Positions 3,355 through 32,432 are shown, counted from the first letter of the stretch. The stretch is DNA of 64,000 nucleotides from Anaeramoeba ignava BMAN (GCA_028826165.1 JAPDFW010000063.1:1054001-1118000); one strand, 5' to 3'. The notes: generated by a model from the sequence alone, not told the origin. Numbers and translations: made by a program.

Positions 3355-6300
3355 TCACCAATTCCCAAATTTTATTAAAGAATCAATTTTTTCCAAATTA
3401 TCAGATCTTTTTCGATTCCTTGACAAAGTAAAACTTCCACTTCTTCTTCTTCTCGGAGTATTATCTTTACTTCTATTAGAACGATTAACATCAAAAAGAC
3501 TTCTTGACTGGTTCTCATTTGAAACATGAGAAAAAGAAAACAAATTTGAATCATTTGAATCTTTAATCTCAAATGATTGATTTTTTTCATCATTTTCTTT
3601 TATGATTTTGGAAGATGAAAAAATATGTTTTTGCTTTGATTTAACTTTTGGAAAGGAATTCTCGGAATAAAATCCAGGAACATCAGTGACTTGTTTAATG
3701 ATCTTCTTTGCCTTTTTAAGACTTTCTAATTTTTGATAACATTTTTTTCTCTTCTCAACTTCGACTTGATTTTCTTCCAGAAGTTTGTCGAAGTTCTCTG
3801 GCTGATATATGTGCGAGTGTAAAACGGGAAGAAGATTATCTCGAAAATGGTAAACAAGGAAATGCAAGATGGATTTCGGGATTGAGTCCGAAATTTTAGT
3901 CTGGACAATTTCAAAGTAATTTTTCATGAGTTGGTAAATCAGCGTTGCATCTTTTTTCTGGGATTCGCTGAGCTCGCCTACAGACCGTATAACAGACGGA
4001 ACTGGGGGAAGGTCCGTGCTTTTGCGCGCGACTTTGGGCTTAGTCTCGTTTGTCAGGAAAAAATCTTTTGGTCTTTTTTGTGCTGTTATTTGGGTGATTA
4101 AGTCAGTTGGATATTGAAAGTGAGGATGTCCAGTGTTTATATAAGCCGATTCAATTTGCACGAGATTTCGCGCAAACTTCTTTGTTTTCTTCACGAGAAA
4201 TTTGATGAACTGAGAAGACACTTGGAGAACTTGATTTTGTAAATTGTGATATTGACTGAATTCGGGAAGATCTAAACTTTTGATGATTTTGTTTAATTCT
4301 TCAGCAACTTGATCAATGCATTTCAAACAAGGAGTTTCTAGCTTTAATATCTCTCTTGTGATAAGGATCTCAAAAGCCTTCTCAGGCACAAGAAAGTTGT
4401 TGCGTGGTCCTGCGCAATTACGGATTGTGTTGATGATTTCGTGTTTGGAGATTCCCTCTGTAATGTCTATTTCCGACATGAACCGAACAAAAATATCGTT
4501 GAAAATGTAGTTGATCAATGATCCGCCATATAACTTGTTTGTTTCTATTTTGGTTGAGGTTCCGTTGATTGTTTCTGTGTTTTCCTGGCAAAATTTATGA
4601 AGAAGTCGAATGATTTGCTCTCCTTTTGAGTTACTTTTTTCTGTTAATGAATCTCCGCGTAAACTTTCATACTCAAGTTTTGTTTTTGATATTCTTGTTG
4701 ATATTTGTTCTTGGAGAACAGGGATTTGTGCTTTGATGTGATTGATCAAGAGTTCAGAGAGTTGTTCCGAAAGATACTTTGTTCCGCATTTATATGCAAT
4801 TTGTTTGTACTGATTGTGTGTTTCAAAAAAGTTTTTTTCGTTTTCGAGTGATTTTTGGATTGAAATTTTTTGATTAAGATCTTTTTGGCTTCTGTTAACA
4901 ACTGGGATAAATCCTAATTTTAATGAGAGAATTTTTCCCTCTATTAATTCCATTGCGTGTGTTTCTTGGTCCATTAAATCTAGTTTTGTCAATACACACT
5001 TTTTGAATCATATAAATAAATAAATTGAAATAAATTGAAATAAATTAAAATAAATTGAAATAAATGTGGAATAAATAAATGAAAAAATAAATAAAATGGA
5101 ATAAATAAATTGAAATAAATAAATTGAAATAAATAAAAATAAATAAATGTGGAATAAATAAATTAATTGAAATAAATGTAAAATAAATTGGAATAAATAA
5201 ATGTGGAATAAATAAATGTGAAATAAATAAATTGAAATAAATAAATGTGAAATAAATAAATTAAAATAAAAAAATGTGGAATAAATAAATAAATTGAAAT
5301 AAATAAATTGGAATAAATAAATGTAAAAAATAAATAAATAAATAAATGTAAAAATAAATAAATGTGAAATAAATAAATATAAATAAAAAAATAAATAAAA
5401 AATAAATAAATAAATAAAATAAATAAATAAAAAATAAATAAATAAAATTGAAATAAATAAATGTGAAATAAAAAAATGAAAATAAATAAATTGGAATAAA
5501 TAAATAAATGTGAAATAAATAAATTAAAAATAAATAAAATGGAAATAAATAAATTGAAATAAATAAATGTGAAATAAAAATAAATTAAAATAAAATAAAT
5601 AAAATAAAAAATAAAAACAAAAATAAAAAATAAATAAATAAAAATAAATAAATAAAAATAAATAAATGTAAAATAAATAAACGTGGAATAAATAAATAAA
5701 TGGAAAAAATAAATGTAAAAATGAAATAAATAAATGGTGAAATAAATAAATTAGGAATAAATAAATAAATTTTAAATAAATAAATAAAAATAAAATAAAT
5801 GAAAAAATAAATAAATTGAAATAAATAAAATAAATAAATAAAACGTGGAATAAATAAATGTAAATAAATAAAAAATTGGAATAAATAAATGTGGAATAAA
5901 TAATGAAATAAATAAATTGAAATAAATAAATAAATAAAAATAAAAAAAATGGAATAAATAAATGGAAGAAATTGAAATAAATAAATGTGAATAAAAAAAA
6001 ATAAATAAACAAAAAATAAATGGAAATAAAAATAAAATGAAATAAAATAAAATAAAAAATAAATAAAATAAATAAATAAAAATGGAACAAAAATAAATAA
6101 ATGTGAAATAAATAAATAAATGTGAAATAAAATAAATTGAAATAAACAAATTGAAATAAATAAATGTGGAATAAATAAATGTGGAATAAATAAAATGAAT
6201 AAATAAATAAATTAAAATAAATAAATAAAATAAATAAATTAAAATAAATAAAATAAAATAAAAAATAAAATAAATAAATGTGGAATAAATAAATGTAAAA

Positions 6301-8517
6301 ATAAAAATAAAATAAAATAAATTAAAATAAATAAATTTGAATAAATAAAATAAATGTGAAATAAAATAAATAAATGTGAAAAAAAAATAAATGAAATAAA
6401 TAAATGTGGAAATAAATAAATGTGAAAATAAATAAATGTGGAATAAATAAAAAATTGGAATAAATAAATAAATAAATAAATAAATAAATTAAATAAAACA
6501 AATAAAATAAATAAATGAAAATAAAATAAATGAAACAAAATAAAACAAATAAATAAATTGAAATAAATAAATAAATGTGGAATAAAAATAAACTGAAAAT
6601 AAAATAAAAATAAATAAATAAAAATTGAAACAAAATGGAATAAATAAAATAAATAAATATGAAATAAATAAAAAAATGAAAATAAATAAAATGTGGAACA
6701 AATAAATAAATAAATGTAAAACAAAATAAATAAACGTGAAATAAATAAACAAATAAATGTGGAATAAATAAACAAATAAATGAAATAAATAAATAAAAAT
6801 AAATAAACGTAAATAAATAAATGAAAAATAAACGTGGAAATAAATAAATTGAAAAAAACAAACGTGGAAATAAATAAATGTAAAATAAATAAACGTGGAA
6901 TAAATAAATTGAAAAAAAAAAATTGAAATAAATAAACGTGGAATAAATAAATGTGGAATAACAAAAAAATGAATAAATAAATAAAATAAAAAAAAACGTG
7001 GAAATAAATAAACTGAATAAATAAATAAATAAAAAAATAAATAAATAAAATAAATAAATTAAAATAAATAAATGAAATAAATAAATGTGGAATAAATAAA
7101 TGTGGAATAAAAAAAAAAATAAATAAATAAATAAATAAAAAATAAATAAAAAATTGGAATAAAAATAAATAAATGTGGAATTAAAATAAATAAATAAATT
7201 GAAATAAATAAATTGGAATAAATAAATAAATTAAAATAAAAAATAAATAAATATAAAAAAATGTGAAATAAATAAATTGGAATAAATAAATGAAATAAAT
7301 AAATTAAAAATTAAAATGGAATAAATAAAATAAATAAAATGTAAAATAAATGTAAAACAAATATGAAAAAAATAAAAAAAATAAATAAACGTGAAAATAA
7401 ATAAATGTGAAAATAAATAATGTGAATAAAATAAATTAAAATAAATAAAATGGAAAAAAAAAATAAAAAATAAATAAATTGAAAAAAAAAATAAAAAAAT
7501 AAAATAAATAAAAATAAATAAATTAAAATAAATTTGTGGAATAAATAAATAAATAAATGTGAAATAAATAAATTGAATAAATAAATAAATTGAAATAAAT
7601 AAATTGAAATAAATAAATTAAAATAAATAAATAAAAATAAATAAATTAAAATAAATAAATGTGGAATAAATAAATGTGGAATAAATAAATGTGGAATAAA
7701 TAAATTTGAAATAAATAAATATGAAATAAATAAATAAATTGAAATAAATAAAATGAAATAAATAAATTGGAATAAATGGAAATGGTTTTTTAAATTGAAA
7801 TAAATAAATAATATATCTACTAAAGTTCTTTTTCCTTCACTATCAAATTGTTGAGCAGCTTTAATAGCCAAATCATTCGCAATATCTTGATTAGCAGGAG
7901 TAACAACAACAATCAATGCATTTTCATTTCTTAAATAACTAAAAACAATTTCTCGAATTTGATCAACAATTTCTTGAGGTTGATAATTTGTTGGGATATT
8001 TGTTAGTCCAGGAAGATCTACAAGAGTTAATTCAGGTATATTTTTTAAATGAAGCTATTGAAAAAATATAATTTAGAAATGATAAAAAAAAATTGTTTTA
8101 ATTTTTCAATGTGAAAAAAATTTTTTTTGATAAATTTCTTTAAATAGACACAGAAAGATAAATAGGAGATTGAGAAACAGAAAGCTTGGGAGCTAGTCTT
8201 TCAGTTTCTGTTTTTATTTCTTCTTTGATTTCATCAAAATCATAGAAAACTTTTGAATTATGATGAAAAGTTGCAAATTCTTTTTGGTTTGATTGTGGAT
8301 TAATTGGAGAAAGTTGCAAGACAATGGGACAACGAGTAACAATTCCCGTTCCTTGAGGCAGAAAATCTTTGCCTATGATTTTTGTAAGAACAGCGGATTT
8401 GCCTGAGCTTTGACTTCCACACACTACAATTTGAGGTAAATCTAATGGCGGTGATTCCAATTCTGCCATTGCAATTTGTAATTGATTTACAATTTGAATA
8501 ACATTATTATAACTCAT
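3355..8517 (-). CDS. Dynamin-related GTPase (Vps1/Drp1-like), 3 exons (~8517-8153, ~8054-7821, 4998-3355)
   Basis: LPQIVVCGSQSSGKS (G1), GIVTRCP (G2), LTLVDLPG (G3), RTL|CVLTKLDLMD (G4), VVNRSQ, middle domain (YINTGHPHF) and GED (YFEIVQTKISDSIPKSILHFLV). No PH domain. Confidence 0.95.
4999..7820 (-). repeat. 2.8-kb low-complexity intron of the dynamin gene: (TTTA)n with interspersed TTCCAC/TTTCAC
   Basis: Donor GTAGAT at 7820 and acceptor AAAAAG at 5000-4999 join RTL to CVLTKLD in frame. The interior is a degenerate 4-bp repeat. Confidence 0.9.
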
Positions 8518-8728: not shown

Positions 8729-11700
8729 TTATTTCTCTTGATCATCAATTTCATTGATTTGTAAATCATTATCATCATTATCATTATTATCATTATTATC
8801 TTCTTTGTTTTCTTTATTATCTTCTTTGTTTTCTTTATTATTATCATCATCAGAAGAACTTGAATTCTTTTTCAAATTTTCAAGATAACCATGAACATCT
8901 TTATCCAATTTCTCAAATTCATTTTCAATTTTCTTCTCAAATTTATCATCTTTACCAACATTGAAATAACGGTATTTTGCAACTTTTGGATTATTCCGAA
9001 GAGTAATAAGCAAAAGAATTCTCAAAGCAGCTTTCTGTTTATTCAATGCATTGAGATACTCCATATCATTTTTAAAGAAATTCATTGCAATATCGAGTTC
9101 AGACTTAGAAATCTTTGCACAACAACCATCTTTACTAAGAAAGCCTTTTTGAATCTGGCGACGATATTTAAATCCACGAGTTAACCCACGGATAAATAAG
9201 GACACAACTGGGTTATTAAATTTGTGGTCCATTTGCAAAACACTGACATATGATCTGTGTCCCGAATCCAAAATTGACAACGATCCACTTAAAGAAGGTT
9301 GGTCCAATCTCATGAAAAAAGCAAGATTTGCAAACATTAGAACAACCAAACGAATAATTGCCGTTGCAAGTCCGGAAACAATGTTCAAAAAGAGCCAAAT
9401 AAAATCCCAAAGATAGAAAAGTCTTGGATGAACAATTTCTCCGTCGCGAGCAATGAAATATTTGATCAACGCTACAATCACTGCCTTTATTACAACGGAA
9501 AGCAGAATCCCTAATAAAATTGGCCAAAGATGCCTCCAGAGAAACTTTCTTAACGGAGCAAAACCAAGACAAACAATGATTGCCAAGAAAATTAACACAA
9601 AAAGAACAAAAGTAATCCCAGCAAGCCAGCCTTGGATTCCGGAATAGCTTGTTGCTGCGGGTGGTGGCATCGGTTGCCGAAATATCTTGTGACCTTGTCT
9701 CATCCTCATGATCCTTTGGCGGTATAATTTCATAATTAGATACCAAAGAACACCAATAACAGCAGCAGAAAGAACAGAAGAAACGCATATTGCAATTAGT
9801 GAAATTTCGAAGTATTTGTCCACTTTGTCGTTGTCAACTGATCCAAGGAAAGAAACAACTCGTAGAATGTTTTGTGGAAGAAAATCAGATGTTGAATTGA
9901 AATTGAGATCTAGATCAAACGATGTGTGGAAAGCGTTTTCAACTGAATATTTTGATTGTGAAATGAATCCTTGCAAACGAGCCTAATGAATAAATAAAAA
10001 ACAAATGAAATGAAATGAAATGAAATGAGAAAATAAATTGAAATATTTTTTTTTTTCACCTTTTGATCAAAATTGGATCAAAATTCAATCAAAAAGTGAA
10101 AAAAAAAAAATAAGAATTTAAAAATTTACTTCAAGTTCAAGAATTTCTTGTCTCCAAATTATCACTTTATATTTAATGTAACTGTTAATTTTTACAAAGA
10201 TCAAAAACATATAGAAAATAATAAAAGAAGTTAGTGTAATTGCAATGAAAAGTCTTTGAGGATAAAAGAAATCTTTTTTGGTTTCAAATCTAGCATGAGG
10301 ATTTTCTTCACTTGCAAGAAGATCTGAAATTTTGGATTTAACTTTGCCGCCAACACTTTTCATTTTATGACCAAAACGAGTGAGAGCACTTTCTGTTTTA
10401 TTATCTTCTTCTTTTTCCTCAGAATCCTTGTTGATAAAGTTTGTGATAAGTTTTGAAATTTCTTGGTCGTTGAGATCATCAAAATTTTTTTTGCGAATAG
10501 AATCGATTGGAATATCATCATCATTTTCATTGTTGTTGTTGTTATTGTTATTGTTATTGTTTTCGTTTTGTTTATTATCAAGATCAGATTCCAATTCAAT
10601 TTCGTTTTGATTTTTTTTTTCCTTTTCATTTTCTTTTCCTTTTTCTTTTTGATCATCCTCATTTTGATCTTCTTTCCATTTTAATTTTTCAGATTTGAAA
10701 TCAGATTCGAATTTTTCGCGAATCCTTTGCAAAACAAAGAATCTCACAGAACCGATTGGAAGAAGACGACGAACCAAATTTTTGTAGTTCTTCAAACGTT
10801 TGGGACAAAATTCCCACTTATTTGGATCTGCCCAGAGATTAACAATAATAAGGAACCAAAGTAAACCAACAGAAAAAAGAGTGACTAGAGTCAGGATAAT
10901 AAGAGAAGTAATAACATATCCGTTTTTAAGAAGAGAATCCTTGGAATTACCCCAAATGGTTCCTACAAGAACCAAAATGAATATTGAAACACCGAATGGA
11001 AGAAGCATTCCCCAGCGACGATTTTGTCTCTCAGAATTTCCAAAGAAAGGGAAAAGCATGATCAAAGTTGCCAAGATGATTAAACCCTTGAGCTTTTTGA
11101 AGCCTGATAAATCTGGGGAAGAGGGATCATGAACATTGAATTTTTGTGATTTTTGTGACTCAATCCCATCGACAATGAAAATGAGTTCGTAATCTTGGGT
11201 TGAACCACTTGTGATTTTAAGATCTGTGAACCTGTAGTAACCACCAGGCTCGGAAACAGGACCACCTGATGAAGTACTAATAGTGCCATGCTGAACAGTC
11301 TTTACTGTTATTGTTTTGTGTTCCATTCCTTTGTTGTCGTGATCGAGAACCAGAATCAGAGGTTGGTCAGGAAGTTTTTCATCAAGTTCAACAAAGTCGT
11401 TTGAACCAATACCTGGTTGTTCGATAATAAGTACTTGTGCGACTGGATTGAACACACTGAACGAGTCTGTGTCTTTTGATTGGACACCATCTGATGTGAA
11501 ATATATTGTATATTTATAATCAGGTTTTCCAGCAATTGCCTTAAGTTCAAATTTTGCGATTCCATATCCATCAGTTGTTTCAACAGAACGCGAAACATCA
11601 AGTGCAAAATTTCCTTTAGCAGCATTTTCACCGACAACTGCTGTGATACCTTTATAAGGAAGAGGAGCTCCGCTTTTGATAAATGCCTGAACAGCAACTT

Positions 11701-14700
11701 GTCCTCCAATCACTTCGCTTCCCACATAAAAATCAGATGTTGCTGGGAAAGGAATTCCAATGGTGATATTCGGACTGGGTTGAATCAAAATCTCGAGTTT
11801 ATCAACAGTGTTTGTGAGTTCGATTTCCATTATATTGCTATTAATTCCATCGCAAGTAAAGACAATCTCATATACACCCAAAGAAACGTTAGTGTAGAAG
11901 TACATGCTATCCAGTATTACTCTTCCTGTTACATCTGTTTCGCCAAAGTAGTTTTCCATGTATAGATCGATTGTTTTATCTCCTGAACCAGCAGGCTTAC
12001 TTGAAAATTTTGCCATCACAAGTGCTCCACTCAAAGGCGAACTATTCACATCAAAAACAGTCACAACAGGTGATGTATAGAATATAACACCTGGAGATGC
12101 TGCAGAAGGAAGTCCTGTCAGAGTTATATGATCCACTAATGTTGTTGCGTTGATTCCTTGATTCGAACAATTTCGGATCATCGGGCTTGTTAGATCTGAT
12201 GAATTGTAGAAACTAAAACAGATAATATATGTTCCAGGTTCAGTTACCGATCTGAATCTCAAATTAGTGAATGTTGCTTTTCCCGCGCTATCTGATTTGG
12301 AACTTACTGCAACTGTATAAATATTGTCAGTATAAAGTGATCCAGTTTCGTTCGTTTCTGCTACAACAAAAACATTTGGAACTCCTCCTCCTGTAGAATT
12401 TAGTATATATACCTCTGGTTGTTGATCAAATATTTTTCCAGAAATTACTGGTTGACTGCTATCATTTGGTGGAATAGTGATTGCAATGATCTCTACTGGT
12501 GCATATGCAATTATTGTTGGTAGTACGTGAGTGAAAACACCTCCAACTCTTAGAATAAGTGAGTATTCTCCGGGATAAAGTAATTGTAAATCTGTGATGT
12601 TTAGAGTACCTGTATCTGTATTAAATAATATTTTTATTTGAATTTGATTTGAATTTAATTTTTATTTGATTTTGATTTGAATTTTATTTGAATTTTATTT
12701 TGATTTGATTTGAATTTGATTTTGATTTTGATTTGATTTTAAATTTGATTTGAATTTAAATTTGAATTTGAATTTGAATTTGAATTTGAATTTGAATATT
12801 TTTATTTGAATTTGATTTTGATTTGATTTTAAATTTGATTTGAATTTGAATATTACCTGAACAATTTACTTTAACTGGATTGCGATAAAACTTCATATCA
12901 CCAGGAACATTAAATTGATTGTCAGGAGTTATCAAATCCTCACTAGGTCCAATCGAAATAGTAATCCAAGCATAAATAAGATATAAAGGAAACTCCATTG
13001 TAATTACATCAACATAATACTCTCCTTTTTGATTAGGATCAGAATCATTAACTTGAACAATAATTGGCTGAGAAAAACCTTTTGCAATTTCAACGTGAGT
13101 TTCAGGAACTTGAACAACGATATTTTGAATATTATTTGTGAGATGGACTGTAAACTCAGTTAAACAATCAAACTCAACATTTGAAGTTTTCCAATGATAA
13201 CTTTCTTCAAGATTAAGAGCATACACAAAAAAATAACCAGCTCCAGTATATCCACTAAAAAAAACATTTGTGAAATTAGCTTCTCCATATTCATCAGTTA
13301 CATTATCAGCTTCTAAAGGAAACATAAAAGAAGTTGGCACAAAATTGTCAAATGTTTCAACAAATAATTGTGTTCCTGTTCGGATAGTTTGATTTGCAAG
13401 TGGTCTTCCTCGGAAATCAAGCACTTTGACTGTCATGTTAAATGGTTCATCAACTCCAACATGAAAAGGTTTACTTAAATAATCTGTGAAGTTTCCCGAT
13501 TTGAAGTATAACTGGGAACATCTAGTAGTACTACTATTTCCAAGCGTTATATTGATCCAATCAGATTCCACAATTAATTCATCACAATAAGCCACTAATT
13601 TTAGCCTTGTTTTACTTGAATTATAAAGGGACACAATTCGCAGATACGGAAATGAAATGATTCCATCAAGATCAGAAACACTGTATTTTCCATCTACTCT
13701 AATTTCACTCATATCATCAATGCTACTTATATTTCCATCTTCTGGAAGAGCTAATATCCATGCAAATTTCCCTGCTACTGGATTCTCATCTTTGTCTGTT
13801 ACTCTTAGCATTGGAGATGGTGTGAACATTCCATAAAGATCACTTAAATTTTGTTTCTCTGAGTATTGCCATCCATCAAGCAATGATGATTCAGTTGAGT
13901 TTTGAAGCCATACCATTTTCGTAACTGATGATAAAATCCAAAAATTAGTGCTTTCTTCTGATTCAACTCCATCACATATAAATGATAATGTGTAAGCTGT
14001 GCTGTTATCTTCTGTATTGTTACTTGTTCCCTCAACTCCGACAGTTAAATTTTCAAATTGCACTCTATTATTTGAATATTATTATTATTATTATTTTTAA
14101 TATTATTATTATTTATTTGAATATTATTATTTGAATTTTATTTGAATATTATTATTATTATTTATTTGAATATTATTATTTGAATATTATTTGAATATTA
14201 TTATTATTATTTTTATTTGAATATTATTATTATTAAATTTTATTTGAATATTATTATTAAATTTTATTTGAATATTATTATTAAATTTTATTTGAATATT
14301 ATTATTATTAAATTTTATTTACTCTCCTTGTGCATCCGTTTTTCCACTAATAACGTTTAAAAGATTTTTGACATATTCATTATCTAGCTCAGATACATCT
14401 GATACAATTTCTCCCATTTTTTTTTTAAATCTCGCAAAAACAATTTTGTTTGGAATTCCTTCACCTCCAGAATTTGTTACTCGAATTTTTGGTTGAGGTG
14501 AAAATGGAACACCTTCAGTTACATTTTCTGAAGGTTGAATAATGATTTCAACATTGGAAACTATAAAAACAAAAGCATATCAAAACATTAAAATTTGAAT
14601 ATTTAAATTGTGTGTTCTTCTTTTACCATCCGTTGAAAATATAACTGGTTGGCCATAAGTTCCAATTCCTGTTTGATTATTTGTATAATAAACCCAATTA

Positions 14701-17275
14701 ATAACATTTGGATCCATAATTGGATCTCTTTCACTAAAGAAAGCAAAGTATAGATCTTTGGTTGTTGCTCCAATTACAGTAAAATCTGTGAATTTAATAG
14801 TTCCGTTTTCATCAGAAGGTCCTGCAACTTCTCCTTCAAATAAAGCTTTATTTTTTTTTTACAGATATTTAACTTAATTTATTAATTTGTTAGATTTTAA
14901 ATTAATTTATCAATTTTTACCAAATCTTTGATAATAAAGAGAAGTTGCAAATTGATTAGGATTATTATAAATTCTCACATAATGACCTGCAAGTGGATTT
15001 CCTTCTGAATCAAAAATTCGAACTTCTGGTTGAACAGTTAAAGGAACACCAAATTCTTCAGTACTATTTCCCGATTCAGAATAAGGAGGAAGATCCGTTG
15101 TATTAATTATTGAAACTAAAATTCAAACATTATTTTAAATTCAAATAATATTATTAAATTCAAATATTATTATTAAATTCAAATAATATTTAATCCAAAT
15201 AATATTTAATCCAAATATTATTAAATCCAAATATTTTTAAGTTCAAATATTTTTAAGTTCAAATATTATTTAAAATTCAAATATTTTTAAATTCAAATAT
15301 TTTTAAGTTCAAATAATATTAAATCCAAATATTATTATTAAACTCAAATATTTTTAAATTCAAATATTTTTAAGTTCAAATATTTTTAAGTTCAAATATT
15401 TTTTAAAATTCAAATATTTTTAAATTCAAATATTTTTTAAAATTCAAATATTATTAAATTCAAATATTATTAAATTCAAATATTTTTAAGTTCAAATATT
15501 TTTAAAATTCCAAATAATATTTAATCCAAATATTATTAAATTCAAATATTATTAAATTCAAATATTTTTAAGTTCAAATATTATTTAATCAAAATATTTT
15601 TAAATTCAAATATTTTTAAGTTCAAATATTATTAAGTTCAAATATTATTATTAAATTCAAATATTATTAAATTCAAATATTATTAAATTCAAATATTTTT
15701 AAGTTCAAATATTATTTAATCAAAATATTTTTAAATTCAAATATTTTTAAGTTCAAATATTATTAAGTTCAAATATTATTATTAAATTCAAATATTATTA
15801 AATTCAAATATTATTAAATCCAAATATTTTTAAGTTCAAATATTTTTAAGTTCAAATATTATTTAATTCAAATATTTTTAAGTTCAAATATTATTTAATT
15901 CAAATATTTTTAAATCCAAATATTATTATTAAATTCAAATATTATTATTAAATTCAAATAATATTTAATTCAAATATTTTTAAATTCAAATATTTTTAAG
16001 TTCAAATATTATTTAAAATTCAAATATTTTTAAGTTCAAATATTATTTAAAATTCAAATAATATTTAATTCAAATATTATTAAATTCAAATATTATTAAA
16101 TTCAAATAATATTTAATTCAAATAATATTTAATCCAAATATTATTAAATTCAAATATTTTTAAATTCAAATATTATTAAATCCAAATATTTTTAAGTTCA
16201 AATATTTTTAAGTTCAAATATTTTTAAATTCAAATAATATTATTTTAAATTCAAATATTTTTAAGTTCAAATATTTTTAAGTTCAAATATTTTTTAAAAT
16301 TCAAATATTTTTAAATTACCATTCGTTTTTGTATAAACTGTAAAAGTTGTCCAAACTGATTCACAGGAATAATTTAGCACAACAGCTCCAATTGGTCCAT
16401 AATTTAATTGCAAACTTGAAAAATCAGTAAATCCATCTTCATCAGTTTTTGATTGAGTTGTTCCTTGGAAAGAAACTGGATATATTTCTTGATCTCTTAT
16501 TTGAATAAGTGTTTTTCCATTTTGATTTGATTGAAATGGAATTGCAGGATCATAAGTTGCTGAAATACTTACTGTTTTAGATTCCAATCCAATTTCAAAC
16601 ATATTGGAAATTCTTGTCTAAAAATTATAAATAAAATTTAAATTAATTTTATTTAAAAATATTAAAATAAAACAGAAAGAATAATAAATTTGTTTTTTGA
16701 TCAAAAAGAATTACATTTGGGACATTTGTAAATGGGGTATTATAATAAACTTCTGAATCAGGAAATTTTGTAAAAGTCATCCTTTTATTTTATAAAAAAA
16801 AAATTATTTTTATTTATTTTGTTGATTAATTTAATCAAATAATCAAAAAAAAAAAAATAATTTAATAACTAAATTAATAAATAAATAATTAAATAATTTG
16901 AGATCAAATATTAAAAATTTTTAATTAAAAAAAAATAAATAAAATTTTGAATTATTTCAATTATTTGAATAAAAGAATATGGTTAATTGCTCTTAAAACA
17001 AAAGAAGAAAATAAAATAAAACAAAACAACAATAAAATTTAATATAAATATTAATATTCATACGTATCAGGATTTTCATCATCAACAACACTTCGTTGAT
17101 AAAATAAAGCAGAAATGGCTTGAAAAGCTGCAATGGAAAGAATAAACAAAAAGAGAAACATGGTTAACAATCTCAAACGAACTCGATCTTGTGTCAAATC
17201 CAAGAAAACTGGTGTATGAAGTCCTTTGATTGAGTGAGTTTGTTTGTCGTAATAAATTTTACCAACTCTTTTCAT
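8729..17275 (-). CDS. ~2,060-aa membrane protein: N-terminal TM anchor, ~10 Ig-like (Big-1/invasin-like) repeats, C-terminal STRA6/RBPR2-like multipass domain; 9 exons
   Basis: Exons at approx. 17275-17064, 16781-16715, 16618-16320, 15115-14920, 14845-14627, 14561-14323, 14065-12857, 12615-10131 and 9982-8729 join in frame through GT-AG introns. Repeat motif: QP...G.PF..QP.V.V.D..G.P......TD..G...F..L....G.Y.L.F..DG. STRA6-like segments: NYKNLVRRLL, FFYPQRLF, LYRQRIMRMRQG, Y.GIQ, FLNIVSG...AIIR, RLD..L.....LDSGHRSYVSVLQMDHKFNNPV, LLITLRNNPKVAKYR. Confidence 0.8.
15120..16315 (+). repeat. ~16-bp intronic tandem repeat TTCAAATATT(A/T)TTAA(A/G)
   Basis: Directly visible; fills intron 3 of the Ig/STRA6-like gene. 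Confidence 0.9.
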
Positions 17276-21557: not shown

Positions 21558-22323
21558 TTAATCTGTATCTTTTTTTGTTAAAATTCCTCCAAACCAAATC
21601 ATAATATCCTTCATCTCTTCATCACAAACATTATGTTTCAAACCTTTGTAAATATTTAATTTGGAATTGAACTTTTTTTCTGATAAAACATTGTGGGATC
21701 CTTCAGCCCAACTTAAAGGAATCACATCATCTTCATCACCATGACAAAAAAGAATAGGAGTACGCTTGTTGATCTCAGAAAATTCTGATCCAAGAGTAGA
21801 AATCAAAGGAATATAACAACTTAAAGCAAGAACTCCATCAATTTTGCTTTTACAACTACGAAGTGCAGTTTGAAGAGAAAGTACTCCTCCTTGAGATATC
21901 CCTCCAATTATCACTATCCGATCTTGCTTCTTTTCTTCTTCAATTATCTTCGCTGCTTTTTCTCCTGCTTGTTTGATCCCTTCAAGATCTTCTTTTGTTC
22001 CAAGTGTGAATCCAAAAACATTAAACCATGCTGTTCTTTTTACTCCTGGTTTGTATCCCATTTCTCTCATCGGTGCATTTGGTAATATTACTTTTGTGTT
22101 TGGAAATGATTCATGTACTTTTTGTCCAAAATTCATTAAAGCTTCTGAAGTTTCTATTTGTATTTTTTTTTTTGAGAAATTGGAACACTTTTTGTTTTTT
22201 TTTTTGATTTGTTTTTGATTATTATTTACGTCCTAATCCATGAAAAAGAATAACTGTTGATTTTGTTTCTTGTTGGCTTTCAATTACTGAAGGAAGGGGT
22301 GTTTCAGTTTGAGTTTCAATCAT
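21558..22323 (-). CDS. Acyl-protein thioesterase / lysophospholipase (APT1/LYPLA-like), 2 exons
   Basis: Exon 1 MIETQ...STVILFHGLG, then an intron (GTAAAT...CAAATAG), then KVILPNAP, AWFN, GGISQGG (Ser), HGDEDDVIP (Asp) and GLKH (His). Confidence 0.92.
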
Positions 22324-29531: not shown

Positions 29532-32432
29532 ATGAGTGAAAAAAAAGGAAAAGAAAGCAAAGATTTTTGGAAAGCAATTGAAGAAAACAACAGTTCATTT
29601 TTGAAGAAGAACAAGAAGCAGTTAATATTACAGAAGAACAAGGACAACCAGACGCTGCTTCATTACGCATGCATTAAGCGAGCGAAGCTGAGCATAATCA
29701 AGTTATTAGTGCAAAATTTGAACATCAACACAAAAGACAATCTTGGGAAAACGGCGCTGCATTATGCGTGCGAAAAAATACCGACGAAAACAGTGCTAAC
29801 GATGCTTATCAAGAACGGAGCGAACATCCACGCGCAAGACGGGGAAGATCATCTGCCGTTACACATTATATGCACAAGAAAAAGAATAACGGAAAAAGAA
29901 CTGAATTTGGTGATCCAACCGGAAACGGATGTCAATGCAAAAGATAACGAGAATAAAACCCCGCTGCACTACGCGTGCGAATATAAGCTTTCTGGGGAAG
30001 TTGTTATGGAGCTGGTACAGCGCGGGGCGAAGACCAACCAAGCGGATGTTCAGGGAAAAGTGCCGTTGCATTATTGTTGCGAAAACGGCGGACGACTTGA
30101 AGTTATTGATGTTTTAACGAAAACGACGATATCAATCAATGAAAAGGACAAGGAGGGACGCTCGCCGTTGCATTACGCATGCATCCACAAGCTGAAGGTG
30201 GAGTGTGTGAGACTTATGGTGGAAAGGGGCGCTGTTGTGAACGCGAAGGACACAAGCAAAAAAACTCCGTTACATTATGAATGTGAAAACGGAATTAGAA
30301 AGGAAGTTGTGGAGCTGTTTCTCAGCAACGGCGGCGTTGCTAATCCGAAAGACGAGAACGGATTGACGCCGTTGCTGATCTTGTTTGCCAAAACAGGGCA
30401 GTCGGAGATTGTTAAGATCCTGATCGAGAACGGTGCGGATCTCGCACTGCAGGATCAAGACCAACTTAATTCTCTTCATCACGCATGCAAAAATGCAGTC
30501 GAGACGGTTGTTCTCGAGATGATCGTCGCTAAGGGTGTGGATATCAACTCGCGAGACTCGCAGGGAAAGACCCCATTGCACTACGCGTGCGAAAATACGC
30601 CCAGAGCAGATTCCCTCGCCCTTCTTCTCCAGAAAGGCGCAGATCCAAACGCCCAAGACGCCCGTCTTCAAACACCCCTTCATTGTCTTTCTCTCTCCAC
30701 CCTCGATCCTCAGCTCTTCACAATTCTTCTGGACGCTGGCGCTGACCCCGCACTTGCTAACGACGACAAACAAACCCCTCTTCATCCCCTCTGCAAACGC
30801 GCTGGTGTTTCCCCCGTTCTCCAGCTTTTCCTCACACACAACGCCGATATCCATGTCGTCGACTCTCTCGGTCGCTCGCTTCTCCACATCGCCTGCGAAC
30901 ACGCCATAGACACACAATCCCTTGAGTTTCTTTCCCAGCACATCCCCATCGATTCCGTAGACACCTCAGGACAAACCCCAATGCACGCTGCATGCAAAAG
31001 TTCCTGCCAATCAAATCTCCAAGCCGTTGAATTTTTGTCCGGCAAAAACGCAAATATCGGAATTAGGGACACGGATGGAAAAACGCCACTTCATTGTGCC
31101 TGCGAAAATAACCCCCAAAAACCCGTTATTGAGTGGCTCATTCAGCACGGAGCGGATATCAACGCAAAGACAAACAACGAGCAATATCCGCTCCATTTTG
31201 CGTGCGAAAAAAGAGCAACTGTGGATGTGCTGGTGCTGCTTGTTGACGACAAGACAGACATCAACTGCGTGGACAAGAACCATCAAACGCCGCTGACTTA
31301 CGCTTGCATTTCGCGCGCGGATCTCGACGTTTTCAAGTTCCTGATCTCGAAGGGCGCAAACGTGAACACAAAGAACTTCTACCACCACTCGCCGCTGCAT
31401 TTTCTGTGCCTGAACCGCGCAAGCATCGATATCATAACACTATTTCTGCAGTCCGGCGCAGATGTCGAACAGAAAGACCACTATTCGCGCACTCCACTCC
31501 ATTTCGCATGCAAAAATAACGGCGACGAAAACGTCATCGACTTGCTTATCGTCACAGGCGCAAGCACAGATCTCCAGGATTACTACAACAAAACACCTCT
31601 TTGCTACGCCGCAGAAAACGGGAATCTTTCCCTTGTTAAGCTCCTCCTCTCCTACGATTCCTCCCTCTGTGGCGCTACAATCGACTCCCTAGAGCCCAAG
31701 ATCCAGCACCTCATCCGCTCATACTACTCGGTCGTCCTCGACTTCCAAAACCTCCTTCTCCGCAGAGAGCTTTCAGACTTCAAGATCAAGTGCAAAAACG
31801 GCACGCTTCTGACTCATTCCCAGATTCTCAAGGCAAGACTCTGCGGAATCTCTGCAAAAATCCATCCCGAGGAGTTCGATAACATCAAAGCTAAGCTCTC
31901 CTCTTTGTGCAAGCAGTATTCCCTCTCAGAACTCACAGACTTCTTTCTCTTCCTCTATTCGGGCTTTGTCGACATCTACAACCCCCAAAAATCCTTCAAT
32001 TTCATCAAAAAATTCGCGCTTGATCTCGGCTTCGACAACAAATGGGTCCAGCGCAAGCGTGGTCGCAAGGGTCTTCTTGCAGATCTCCAGCGGCTCTATG
32101 AAGAGCACGACACAAAGGACTTCACTATCGTTGTCCAGGGTCAGGAGCTTCATATCCACAAATCCGTTCTCGTTGCTCGCTCAAATTTGTACCGCTCTAT
32201 GTTCCTTGTCGTAGAGAAAGACCGCTCTCACCAAGTCGAGGATTCTAGCGGTAAATCCCAGACAGCTATGCACCAATTCATCAAATTCTTGTATTTCGAT
32301 ATTCTTGCTGATGGTCTTTCAACTCAAACTCTCTATGAATTTTCTGATGTCAAGGATTTTTTCCAACTTAATCCAAACTCGTATTTGAGTTATCAATTAG
32401 AGGATATTCAATCTTTGCATAAAAAGAAGTGA
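29532..32432 (+). CDS. Ankyrin-repeat (~20 repeats) protein with two C-terminal BTB/POZ domains; putative Cullin-3 substrate adaptor; intronless
   Basis: Repeated G.TPLHYAC...LL..GADIN.KD. BTB1: ELSDFKIK...THSQILKAR...FFLFLYSG. BTB2: TKDFTIVV...HIHKSVLVARSNLYRSMF...FIKFLY. Confidence 0.93.
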   Translation: MSEKKGKESKDFWKAIEENNSSFLKKNKKQLILQKNKDNQTLLHYACIKRAKLSIIKLLVQNLNINTKDNLGKTALHYACEKIPTKTVLTMLIKNGANIHAQDGEDHLPLHIICTRKRITEKELNLVIQPETDVNAKDNENKTPLHYACEYKLSGEVVMELVQRGAKTNQADVQGKVPLHYCCENGGRLEVIDVLTKTTISINEKDKEGRSPLHYACIHKLKVECVRLMVERGAVVNAKDTSKKTPLHYECENGIRKEVVELFLSNGGVANPKDENGLTPLLILFAKTGQSEIVKILIENGADLALQDQDQLNSLHHACKNAVETVVLEMIVAKGVDINSRDSQGKTPLHYACENTPRADSLALLLQKGADPNAQDARLQTPLHCLSLSTLDPQLFTILLDAGADPALANDDKQTPLHPLCKRAGVSPVLQLFLTHNADIHVVDSLGRSLLHIACEHAIDTQSLEFLSQHIPIDSVDTSGQTPMHAACKSSCQSNLQAVEFLSGKNANIGIRDTDGKTPLHCACENNPQKPVIEWLIQHGADINAKTNNEQYPLHFACEKRATVDVLVLLVDDKTDINCVDKNHQTPLTYACISRADLDVFKFLISKGANVNTKNFYHHSPLHFLCLNRASIDIITLFLQSGADVEQKDHYSRTPLHFACKNNGDENVIDLLIVTGASTDLQDYYNKTPLCYAAENGNLSLVKLLLSYDSSLCGATIDSLEPKIQHLIRSYYSVVLDFQNLLLRRELSDFKIKCKNGTLLTHSQILKARLCGISAKIHPEEFDNIKAKLSSLCKQYSLSELTDFFLFLYSGFVDIYNPQKSFNFIKKFALDLGFDNKWVQRKRGRKGLLADLQRLYEEHDTKDFTIVVQGQELHIHKSVLVARSNLYRSMFLVVEKDRSHQVEDSSGKSQTAMHQFIKFLYFDILADGLSTQTLYEFSDVKDFFQLNPNSYLSYQLEDIQSLHKKK

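What the first reader, a model, noticed from the sequence alone, without database searches (positions are those of the whole stretch)
8729..17275. STRA6-like lipid/retinoid receptor fused to ~10 adhesin-type Ig repeats
Seen: four separate ORFs and five untracked exons splice into one ~2,060-aa protein with a short cytosolic N-terminus, a TM anchor, ~10 Ig-like repeats, 3 TMs, then a multipass domain. Known: that domain shows, in the correct order, segments like those of animal STRA6/RBPR2 (RBP_receptor family): juxtamembrane Y...VRRLL, F.YP.R, YR.....LR.G, RLD...LD.G...Y...L..D....NP, and LLITLRNNP.V..YR, which resembles the STRA6 calmodulin-binding helix. The Ig repeats resemble bacterial invasin/Big-1-like surface repeats. 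Animal STRA6 has no large ectodomain and binds soluble RBP. Inference: this protein may carry its own capture or adhesion arm, so that a bound cell or carrier (prey or symbiont bacterium) delivers hydrophobic ligand into the membrane under Ca2+/calmodulin control. I do not know of a characterised protein with this architecture, though uncharacterised protist homologues may exist.
Basis: partly seen in the sequence, partly recalled or inferred. Interest (0 to 1): 0.85.

Follow-up and report, generated by a model that had tools for sequence, protein, structure and literature searches.

The report
Protist STRA6 relative with Ig arm
One nine-exon gene of the anaerobic amoeba Anaeramoeba ignava encodes a 2,058-residue surface protein that joins ten Ig-like domains to a true relative of STRA6, the animal vitamin A receptor; this shows that the supposedly animal-only receptor belongs to an old, widespread protist family whose function is unknown.

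Summary
On the minus strand, 17275 to 8729, nine exons with GT..AG introns and matching phases give 2,058 aa. This is identical to the public protein KAJ5076061.1 (hypothetical protein M0811_06923, Anaeramoeba ignava).

- **Layout:** a conserved cytosolic N-terminal motif, a TM anchor, ten Ig-like repeats carrying 33 N-glycosylation sequons, then a multipass domain.
- **STRA6 homology:** Pfam RBP_receptor scores 56-62 bits against a cut-off of 25. phmmer to zebrafish STRA6 (5SY1) gives 2.4e-7. The predicted fold has STRA6 as its only strong PDB match (Foldseek 6.3e-7; Z 13.7 over 419 residues).
- **Motifs:** The last one aligns with the experimentally defined calmodulin-binding BP2 helix.
- **Fusion:** it does not rest on splicing. 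Exon 8 alone holds four Ig repeats and the first four membrane helices.
- **Ig repeats:** these are Ig-like folds, but "invasin/Big_1 type" is not established.
- **Distribution:** the same architecture occurs in Metamonada, Amoebozoa, Apusomonadida, Stramenopiles, Euglenozoa and cryptophytes. This genome holds at least 22 STRA6-like loci.

Function (ligand capture, calmodulin control) remains inference. I obtained no RNA evidence for this gene. The scan already reported this family on other DNA of the same genome (s1-686534, s1-686579).

The parts
8729..17275 (-). Whole gene M0811_06923 (Anaeramoeba ignava): 9 exons, 8 GT..AG introns, 2,058 codons plus stop
   Evidence: The exon model derived here is identical to public protein P0001 / KAJ5076061.1.
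17064..17275 (-). Exon 1 (aa 1-70). Cytosolic N-terminus with the conserved juxtamembrane motif (P-V-F-L-D-L-x-x-D-R-V-R-x-R, aa 22-35) and TM anchor (aa 36-58; 17102-17218 covers motif plus TM).
   Evidence: Hydropathy. The motif is conserved in Anaeramoeba, Pelomyxa, Cantina, Papus and Lacrimia homologues (alignment A4). Coordinates checked.
16715..16781 (-). Exon 2 (aa 71-93), start of the ectodomain
16320..16617 (-). Exon 3 (aa 94-192), Ig-like repeat 1
14921..15115 (-). Exon 4 (aa 193-257), first half of Ig-like repeat 2
14627..14845 (-). Exon 5 (aa 258-330), second half of repeat 2
14323..14560 (-). Exon 6 (aa 331-409), first half of repeat 3
12857..14064 (-). Exon 7 (aa 410-812), repeats 3 (end) to 6
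   Evidence: All-beta model, mean pLDDT 75.
10130..12615 (-). Exon 8 (aa 813-1641). Holds repeats 7-10 (last repeat 11132-11383), STRA6-fold helices a-c (10835-11092), YKNLVRRLL, an acidic/Asn-rich cytosolic insert (10283-10735), and FFYPQR plus helix d (10190-10270). One open frame joins the Ig repeats to the membrane domain.
   Evidence: 847-aa stop-free frame. Features. The structural alignment to 5SY1 starts at model residue 115 = aa 1314.
8729..9982 (-). Exon 9 (aa 1642-2058 plus stop). Holds helices e-h (9338-9805), the RLD..D.G.R.Y..NNP motif (9209-9310), the BP2-like helix (8969-9055) and an acidic tail.
   Evidence: Pfam PF14752 5.1e-17. phmmer to 5sy1_A 2.4e-7 with BP2 aligned. Coordinates checked.
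8969..10288 (-). Extent of the Pfam RBP_receptor match on the spliced protein (aa 1589-1979, profile 237-603). It crosses the exon 8/9 junction.
15119..16317 (.). Intron 3, filled almost edge to edge by 72 copies of a 16-nt tandem repeat. Introns 6 (14066-14310) and 7 (12636-12851) are filled likewise.

Best explanation
Shown here: this is a single gene for a 2,058-aa glycoprotein of the cell surface or of a compartment continuous with it.

- A short cytosolic N-terminus with a conserved motif leads into a membrane anchor.
- The chain then runs outside through ten Ig-like beta-sandwich repeats and re-enters the membrane directly as the first helix of a STRA6-homologous multipass domain.
- The cytosolic C-terminal helices include a counterpart of the calmodulin-binding BP2 helix of STRA6.
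- It is the orthologue of A. flamelloides proteins and one of at least 22 STRA6-like loci in this genome.
- It belongs to a family with the same Ig-plus-STRA6 layout in at least six major eukaryote lineages.

Inferred mechanism: like STRA6, the membrane domain probably forms a dimer with an outward-facing lipophilic cleft that passes a hydrophobic small molecule between an outside donor and the bilayer without using energy. Animal STRA6 docks a soluble carrier (RBP). Here the built-in Ig array would hold the donor instead, which could be a particle, a bacterial surface or a secreted carrier. Calmodulin on the C-terminal helix could tune the direction or rate.

The ligand is not retinol-RBP. 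Six-frame search found no lipocalin gene in the genome.

I put identity and architecture at about 0.95. The transport-receptor mechanism is about 0.4-0.5.
For: - **Gene model:** identical to the public protein.
- **Fusion inside one exon:**
- **STRA6 homology by sequence:** Pfam PF14752 at 62.2 and 56.5 bits against a cut-off of 25, crossing the exon 8/9 junction. phmmer to 5sy1_A gives 2.4e-7 over chain residues 418-637.
- **STRA6 homology by fold:** an AF2 model (pLDDT 74, above 88 over most of the C-terminal helices) has STRA6 as the only PDB hit at E<=1e-3 (6.3e-7, prob 1.0). VIA gives Z 13.7, rmsd 6.7 A, over 419 aligned residues.
- **Conserved family columns:** DFxYPQR, YRxxIxxLRxG, FxRxD...DxGxxxY...NNPV and RWxLxxTLxxNPxL. 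The last matches the zebrafish and sheep BP2 peptides.
- **Ectodomain:** ten repeats. Both models are all-beta and Ig-like. 33 sequons lie in the ectodomain.
- **Orthologues:** A. flamelloides proteins are colinear over the whole length, with the ectodomain at E about 1e-170 to 1e-178. In the tree, P0001 pairs with P0003.
- **Paralogue transcripts:** complete transcriptome ORFs of two A. ignava paralogues carry ten repeats plus the STRA6 domain (P0153, P0030).
- **Spread of the layout:** 34 of 47 long homologues carry at least 3 of the same repeats.
- **N-terminal element:** the motif plus anchor is conserved across supergroups.
- **No RBP partner:** no lipocalin PF00061 in the genome.
Against: - No transcript or read evidence for this particular gene.
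- The first ~236 positions of the Pfam profile find no sequence match. The structural alignment starts only at STRA6 residue 106, so the N-terminal part of the STRA6 fold may differ.
- Z 13.7 for a helical bundle is near the level the tool itself warns can arise from common arrangements. The case rests on sequence and fold together.
- Nothing here shows a cleft, a dimer, a ligand, calmodulin binding or localisation.
- The W of BP2 is replaced by I in this protein.
- The absence of a lipocalin was tested only in six frames, exon by exon.
Confidence: 0.55

Rival explanations
1. Adhesion or phagocytic/symbiont-contact receptor. The Ig array binds surfaces (prey, Desulfobacteraceae symbionts, substrate). 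The STRA6-like domain serves as a membrane anchor and calmodulin-linked signalling platform, with no lipid transfer.
For: - Long glycosylated Ig arrays are typical of adhesion molecules. The ectodomain model matches contactin, DSCAM, Robo and the bacterial grappling-hook protein as well as other Ig arrays.
- The family is expanded to at least 22 loci in an amoeba that houses bacteria in surface-connected symbiosomes (PMC11550330).
- Vertebrate STRA6 is also described as a signalling receptor (abstracts of PMC5549806 and PMC12953553).
Against: - The most conserved columns of the family lie inside and next to the membrane helices, including a nearly invariant Arg in the last helix. This suggests the membrane domain does more than anchor.
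- The family also occurs in free-living lineages with no known symbionts.
Confidence: 0.25
2. The Ig arm is a bacterial-type (invasin/Big_1) adhesin module, possibly acquired by lateral transfer. It captures prey or symbiont bacteria so that they deliver ligand under Ca2+/calmodulin control.
For: - Sub-threshold Big_1 hits in the A. flamelloides orthologue (30.9 bits against a cut-off of 34.9) and in 2 of 61 repeats.
- The repeat profile hits invasin at 0.019-0.034 and intimin at 0.13 among PDB sequences.
- InvE, invasin, FdeC and intimin score Z 8.1-9.2 to the last repeat.
- LGT is frequent in Anaeramoeba (PMC11550330).
Against: - No repeat of this protein reaches any Pfam family.
- Runt and STAT (Z 9.5-9.7), S-layer SbsC and complement MG domains tie with the invasin family.
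- The best sequence hits are the Sap S-layer protein and alpha-2-macroglobulin.
- The same repeat family sits in front of the STRA6 domain in six eukaryote lineages. The array is therefore old and eukaryotic, not a recent bacterial gift.
- No beta-barrel anchor or lectin tip of invasin/intimin was found.
Confidence: 0.1
3. Annotation artefact. The Ig exons and the membrane exons are separate genes, or some exons are not used.
For: No RNA evidence for this locus was obtained. Introns 1 and 3 are long (282 and 1,204 nt).
Against: - Exon 8 alone joins four Ig repeats to four membrane helices in one 847-aa open frame.
- All eight introns have GT..AG and compatible phases.
- The orthologues are colinear end to end.
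- The paralogue on contig C55 matches piece by piece with breaks at the same positions.
- Two paralogues exist as complete transcriptome ORFs.
- The N-terminal motif of exon 1 is conserved family-wide.
Confidence: 0.03

Closest known systems
STRA6, the vertebrate receptor for retinol uptake (zebrafish structure 5SY1; Pfam PF14752 RBP_receptor)
   Same: Homologous multipass domain by profile, pairwise sequence and predicted fold. Shared motifs include RLD, D.G.R.Y, (N/H)P, a conserved Arg in the last membrane helix, and the BP2 helix (..LL.TL.NNP.(L/V)...R) that binds calmodulin in STRA6.
   Different: STRA6 is about 670 aa with no large ectodomain and docks soluble RBP. This protein has an extra N-terminal anchor, about 1,260 aa of Ig-like repeats and a 150-aa low-complexity cytosolic insert. 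The first ~236 profile positions are not matched. No lipocalin was found in the genome. The organism is an anaerobic metamonad amoeba, whereas the papers read call STRA6 animal-specific (PMC5977736) or say it appears in vertebrates (PMC12714816).
RBPR2 / STRA6L, the second vertebrate member of the same Pfam family (from general knowledge, not tested here)
   Same: Same family, with presumed carrier-to-membrane retinol transfer.
   Different: Short form without an ectodomain. No sequence of it was available here for comparison.
Long-form STRA6-like proteins of other protists and the paralogues in this genome (earlier scan reports s1-686534 and s1-686579)
   Same: Same order of parts: N-terminal motif and anchor, array of the same Ig-like repeat family, then the STRA6-like domain. 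Examples are A. flamelloides P0002-P0004, Pelomyxa schiedti P0019, Thecamonas trahens P0057, Cantina P0027, Lacrimia P0047, Papus P0094 and Guillardia P0048.
   Different: This is a separate locus (contig C64) with its own A. flamelloides orthologue (P0003). It has nine exons, whereas the earlier report describes a 17-exon paralogue. Repeat numbers in other lineages range from 3 to 10.
Inverse-autotransporter adhesins invasin/intimin (Big_1 arrays) and alpha-2-macroglobulin/complement MG arrays
   Same: Strings of roughly 100-aa Ig-like beta-sandwiches with a similar core pattern (..D..G.P..G..V......TD..G.A.F.L......G.Y...). Weak profile and fold matches.
   Different: No Pfam membership. No outer-membrane barrel, lectin tip or thioester domain. 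The anchor is a eukaryotic multipass domain.

Membership tests
STRA6 / RBP_receptor (PF14752) | Score above Pfam's gathering cut-off | tested here: met
   62.2 bits for exon 9 alone and 56.5 bits for the whole protein, against a cut-off of 25. Profile positions 237-603 of 605.
STRA6 / RBP_receptor (PF14752) | Direct sequence similarity to an experimentally solved STRA6 | tested here: met
   phmmer to 5sy1_A, E 2.4e-7, query 124-348 against chain 418-637.
STRA6 / RBP_receptor (PF14752) | STRA6 fold of the membrane domain | tested here: met
   AF2 model with pLDDT 74. Foldseek's top and only hit at E<=1e-3 is 5sy1_A (6.3e-7). VIA gives Z 13.7 with 419 of 582 residues aligned. This is a predicted structure, not a solved one.
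STRA6 / RBP_receptor (PF14752) | Nine TM helices plus one intramembrane helix, N-terminus outside, C-terminus inside | tested here: inconclusive
   Eight hydrophobic helices follow the ectodomain. Orientation fits: ectodomain out, C-terminal helices in. The structural alignment starts at chain residue 106 and the first ~236 profile positions are unmatched, so the two N-terminal helices of STRA6 may be missing or replaced by the separate N-terminal anchor.
STRA6 / RBP_receptor (PF14752) | C-terminal calmodulin-binding BP2 helix | tested here: met
   Met at sequence level only. aa 1951-1979 align with the published zebrafish BP2 peptide, and the family consensus RWxLxxTLxxNPxL matches zebrafish and sheep BP2. 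Actual binding cannot be tested with these tools.
STRA6 / RBP_receptor (PF14752) | Cognate carrier: a retinol-binding lipocalin (RBP4 type) | tested here: not met
   No PF00061 match in the 42.8-Mb genome in six frames. This bears on the ligand, not on homology.
Bacterial Ig-like domain group 1 (Big_1, PF02369; invasin/intimin type) | Pfam match above the cut-off in the repeats | tested here: not met
   No Big_1 hit in this protein. 2 of 61 family repeats hit at E<=0.01. The best case, in the A. flamelloides orthologue, is 30.9 bits against a cut-off of 34.9.
Bacterial Ig-like domain group 1 (Big_1, PF02369; invasin/intimin type) | Inverse-autotransporter context (beta-barrel anchor, C-terminal lectin-like tip) | tested here: not met
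   No such domain in the Pfam scans of the whole protein. The anchors are alpha-helical.
Ig-like beta-sandwich repeats (fold level) | Repeated ~100-aa beta-sandwich domains | tested here: met
   Ten repeats by iterated HMM. All-beta models. The last repeat scores Z 8-9.7 to Runt, STAT, invasin-family, SbsC and C3 MG domains. The array matches multi-Ig proteins at E 1e-15 to 1e-21.

The most novel reading that the evidence does not exclude
The long form may be the ancestral state of the STRA6 family. That would be a LECA-age, self-contained capture-and-transfer receptor with this layout:
- the N-terminal anchor, with its conserved cytosolic motif, packs back onto the STRA6-like helix bundle;
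- the ten-domain Ig array therefore forms a closed arch over the outward lipophilic cleft;
- the arch holds a lipid donor in place of a soluble carrier.

On this reading, animal STRA6/RBPR2 are stripped-down descendants that outsourced capture to RBP. In Anaeramoeba, the expanded family would work at the symbiosome or plasma membrane to exchange lipophilic compounds with bacteria.
Probability: 0.2. Interest if true: 0.85.

Novelty: new variant of a known kind. Interest (0 to 1): 0.58.

Why it matters
**Why a STRA6 specialist would care**
- STRA6 is described as a unique transporter. One paper read here calls it animal-specific (PMC5977736) and another says it appears in vertebrates (PMC12714816).
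- This gene and its relatives show that the STRA6 membrane domain, including the calmodulin-binding helix, is conserved across at least six major eukaryote lineages.
- In protists the domain usually sits behind a long Ig-like ectodomain and a second, conserved membrane anchor.
- This gives the vitamin A receptor an evolutionary origin that can be tested. It also offers natural variants for asking what the STRA6 fold does when there is no RBP.

**Why it matters for Anaeramoeba**
- It points to a large, uncharacterised surface-receptor family in an organism whose biology centres on bacteria held in surface-connected compartments.

**Limits**
- The function is unknown.
- Public databases already tag the domain automatically (P0001 carries PF14752; UniRef names a Hemiselmis homologue 'Receptor for retinol uptake STRA6').
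- This scan has already reported paralogues in the same genome.

Tried and rejected
2. **Word-index homologue searches.** Two searches of the membrane domain (regions 1200-2058 and 1690-1985 of P0001) returned only the query. Relatives are about 30% identical, below what that index sees. A third search (aa 411-1000), meant to catch transcriptome fragments of this gene, found nothing. The exhaustive HMMER search supplied the homologues instead.
3. **Pfam naming of the repeats.** Only sub-threshold hits appeared: CarboxypepD_reg, MG4 and Big_1. The repeat profile against PDB sequences reached only E 0.002-0.03. I therefore did not file the repeats under Big_1.
4. **Literature.** Searches for STRA6 with Dictyostelium, protist, Anaeramoeba plus retinol, RBP_receptor, or unicellular/Amoebozoa/metamonad terms found no paper on non-animal STRA6 homologues. 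The STRA6 structure paper (PMC5114850) is not held, so I could not map helices a-h onto TM1-9.
5. **First guess at the organism.** I first thought of a dictyostelid or an anaerobic fungus. The database record settled it as Anaeramoeba ignava. The genome statistics fit the published 80.65% A+T genome and 91.86% A+T introns.
6. **Rfam.** No match on the window.
7. **Tree.** The careful tree did not finish within the time limit. Only the quick tree is reported.
8. **The joined spliced model.** I sent no self-joined sequence to any search or folding tool. I searched the exons by reference. I built the joined translation only inside a local script, to compare it with the public protein. All whole-length work then used the public protein id P0001.

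Full report
**What is in the sequence**

The window is 22% GC. It is contig C64:1054001-1118000 of a 42.8-Mb, 147-contig genome.

Between 17275 and 8729 on the minus strand, four long ORFs and five shorter stop-free pieces can be joined by eight GT..AG introns whose phases all fit. The exons are:
- 17275-17064
- 16781-16715
- 16617-16320
- 15115-14921
- 14845-14627
- 14560-14323
- 14064-12857
- 12615-10130
- 9982-8729 (stop included)

Introns are 5-20% GC and the CDS is 34% GC.

An exhaustive HMMER search with the last exon returned a public 2,058-aa protein, P0001, as best hit. A local comparison showed that my nine-exon translation is identical to it, residue for residue. P0001 is KAJ5076061.1, hypothetical protein M0811_06923 of Anaeramoeba ignava, which taxonomy places in Metamonada. 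The published description of that genome (80.65% A+T, introns 91.86% A+T; PMC11550330) fits the window.

I sent no self-joined sequence to any search tool. Exons were searched by reference. Whole-length work used the public id P0001.

**Architecture**

Hydropathy gives one strong N-terminal anchor. The best 19-residue stretch starts at residue 36 and I read the anchor as aa 36-58. About 35 mostly basic or polar residues precede it, which is too many for a typical cleaved signal peptide.

A long hydrophilic stretch follows, to about aa 1318. It carries 33 of the protein's 36 NxS/T sequons.

Then come eight hydrophobic helices:
- a-c at 1321-1406
- d at 1601-1621
- e at 1701-1721
- f at 1764-1782
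- g at 1788-1814
- h at 1829-1856

A 150-aa acidic/Asn-rich insert (1440-1590) lies between c and d, and the tail is acidic.

An HMM seeded on the last repeat and iterated over this protein and nine relatives finds exactly ten repeats in P0001: 85-187, 215-299, 347-453, 489-584, 616-701, 738-848, 872-960, 988-1077, 1113-1200 and 1224-1307. AF2 models of residues 59-1215 (pLDDT 75) and 1200-2058 (pLDDT 74) are all-beta through the repeats and helical afterwards.

One refinement is that the '3 TMs' belong to the STRA6 fold.

**Is the membrane domain STRA6-like?**

Yes, by three kinds of evidence.
1. **Profile.** Pfam RBP_receptor (PF14752) scores 62.2 bits for exon 9 alone and 56.5 bits on the whole protein, against a cut-off of 25. 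The match (aa 1589-1979, profile 237-603) crosses the exon 8/9 junction.
2. **Pairwise sequence.** phmmer against all PDB sequences finds only zebrafish STRA6 (5sy1_A), E 2.4e-7, chain 418-637.
3. **Predicted fold.** Foldseek's top hit for the model, and its only hit at E<=1e-3, is 5sy1_A (6.3e-7, probability 1.0, 463 columns). VIA-align gives Z 13.7, rmsd 6.7 A, 419 aligned residues, model 115-716 against chain 106-574. The tool warns that Z near 13 can occur between unrelated helical bundles, so the fold match counts only together with the sequence evidence.

They coincide with the conserved columns of a 46-sequence family alignment: DFxYPQR, YRxxIxxLRxG, FxRxD..DxGxxxY..NNPV and RWxLxxTLxxNPxL. 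Nearly invariant residues are R1600, R1736, G1738, R1852, R1866, D1880 and P1899.

The last motif aligns with zebrafish residues 600-626. This is the BP2 peptide, described as providing the major set of calmodulin interactions (PMC7154012; PMC12714816). The sheep BP2 peptide shows the same pattern. So the resemblance to the calmodulin-binding helix is real at sequence level. Binding itself is untested.

**Is it one gene?**

The key point does not rest on splicing. Exon 8 is part of a single 847-aa open frame. It contains Ig repeats 7-10, helices a-d and the FFYPQR motif.

Several things support the upstream exons.
- The intron phases are all compatible.
- Three A. flamelloides proteins match end to end, with the ectodomain at E 1e-159 to 1e-178.
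- A close paralogue on contig C55 matches piece by piece at 36-48% identity, with breaks at the same positions.
- Complete transcriptome ORFs exist for two other A. ignava paralogues with ten repeats plus the STRA6 domain (P0153 and P0030).
- The exon-1 sequence is conserved family-wide (see the N-terminal element below).

Direct RNA evidence for this locus is missing.

**What are the Ig repeats?**

They are Ig-like beta-sandwiches, but no family label is justified.
- No repeat of this protein reaches a Pfam family. The weak hits are CarboxypepD_reg and MG4.
- Of 61 repeats from seven family members, only two hit Big_1 at E<=0.01.
- A profile of these repeats against PDB sequences gives S-layer Sap 0.002, alpha-2-macroglobulin 0.018, invasins 0.019-0.034 and intimin 0.13.
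- At fold level the last repeat scores Z 9.7 to Runt, 9.5 to STAT, 9.2-8.9 to InvE, invasin, FdeC and intimin, and 8-8.7 to SbsC and C3 MG domains. These are effectively tied.
- The whole array matches generic multi-Ig proteins. These include ciliary central-apparatus proteins, nuclear-pore-complex chains, GhpA, A2M/C5/CD109 and contactin.

'Adhesin-type' is thus a fair description of shape. 'Bacterial invasin/Big-1' is not established.

**Relatives**

The HMMER search found 484 representatives at E<=1e-3. Named sources (taxonomy) are listed below.

| Organism | Lineage | Length (aa) | Repeats |
|---|---|---|---|
| A. flamelloides | Metamonada | 2,047-2,150 | 10 |
| Pelomyxa schiedti | Amoebozoa | 1,861 | 8 |
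| Luapelamoeba | Amoebozoa | 1,977 | not counted for this isoform |
| Clastostelium | Amoebozoa | 1,297 | 3 |
| Ceratiomyxa | Amoebozoa | 906 | 2 |
| Thecamonas trahens | Apusomonadida | 1,944 | 8 |
| Cantina marsupialis | Stramenopiles | 2,704 | 6 |
| Lacrimia lanifica | Diplonemea | 3,248 | 4 |
| Papus ankaliazontas | Kinetoplastea | 2,004 | 6 |
| Guillardia theta | cryptophyte | 2,337 | 3 |
| Hemiselmis tepida | cryptophyte | 889 | 1 |

UniRef names the Hemiselmis protein 'Receptor for retinol uptake STRA6'. Of the 47 representatives of at least 1,100 aa, 34 carry three or more copies of the same repeat family upstream of the STRA6-like domain.

In the genome itself, PF14752 matches 22 places, 21 of them above the cut-off. 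A quick tree pairs P0001 with A. flamelloides P0003 (SH-aLRT 88) inside an Anaeramoeba clade (82). The gene therefore predates the split of the two species, whose orthologues average 37% identity.

**A conserved N-terminal element**

The earlier notes I saw do not mention this. The cytosolic residues just before the N-terminal anchor follow a motif, R-x-P-x-F-L-D-L-x-x-D-x-V-R-x-R. It is shared by Anaeramoeba, Pelomyxa, Cantina, Papus and Lacrimia proteins and by two unnamed environmental proteins. D26 is invariant and R35 nearly so.

The anchor is therefore a conserved working part and not a cleaved leader. Both ends of the Ig array are then tied to the membrane.

**How it most likely works**

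What is shown is an outside-facing, glycosylated Ig array bracketed by a conserved N-terminal anchor and a STRA6-homologous domain, with conserved intramembrane and cytosolic motifs.

What is inferred comes from the published STRA6 mechanism. That mechanism involves a dimer, an outward lipophilic cleft open to the bilayer, energy-free transfer and bound calmodulin. It is described in the papers and in the 5SY1 entry. By analogy, the domain would pass a lipophilic molecule between an outside donor and the membrane, the Ig array would replace the soluble carrier-docking step, and calmodulin would modulate it.

The ligand is not RBP-retinol, since no lipocalin was found in the genome. I give this mechanism about 0.4-0.5. 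A pure adhesion/signalling role gets about 0.25. An annotation artefact gets about 0.03.

**Comparison and novelty**

The protein is a member of the STRA6/RBP_receptor family. It is not a member of Big_1.

The papers I could search describe STRA6 as animal-specific (PMC5977736) or as appearing in vertebrates (PMC12714816). None discusses protist homologues. Databases already tag the domain automatically, and this scan reported paralogues of the same genome earlier (s1-686534, s1-686579).

I rate this locus a new variant of a known kind, with interest 0.58. It is solid and evolutionarily informative. Its function is unknown, and it is one of many paralogues already noticed.

Noticed in passing
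window 15119-16317, 14066-14310, 12636-12851: Introns 3, 6 and 7 of the gene are filled almost from donor to acceptor by tandem repeats built on a shared ATTTGAA/TTCAAAT core. Intron 3 holds 72 copies of a 16-nt unit and is 1.2 kb long. The exons on either side are intact.
   Followed up: partly
window 29532-32432 (+): An intron-free 966-aa ORF with many ankyrin repeats and a C-terminal BTB domain has 47% GC in a 22% GC window. This is a strong compositional outlier. It could be a recent transfer or simply a repeat-driven composition.
   Followed up: partly
window 3355-8517 (-): The gene directly downstream is a dynamin. Dynamin_N is at 8140-8517 and Dynamin_M plus GED at 3355-4992, with very AT-rich stretches between them.
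   Followed up: partly
G000:C55:117154-124335 (+); locus L003 covers its 3' end: This is the closest paralogue of the gene in this genome (36-48% identity). Its matching pieces break at the same positions, so the intron positions seem conserved.
   Followed up: partly
protein P0024 (KAJ5068224.1, A. ignava, 2,009 aa): This family member has six of the Ig-like repeats and a C-terminal match to the STRA6-like exon of this gene. Its public name is 'RNA polymerase iii transcription initiation factor b', which looks like a misannotation.
   Followed up: no
window 21558-22136 (-): An ORF with a phospholipase/carboxylesterase (Abhydrolase_2) domain.
   Followed up: no
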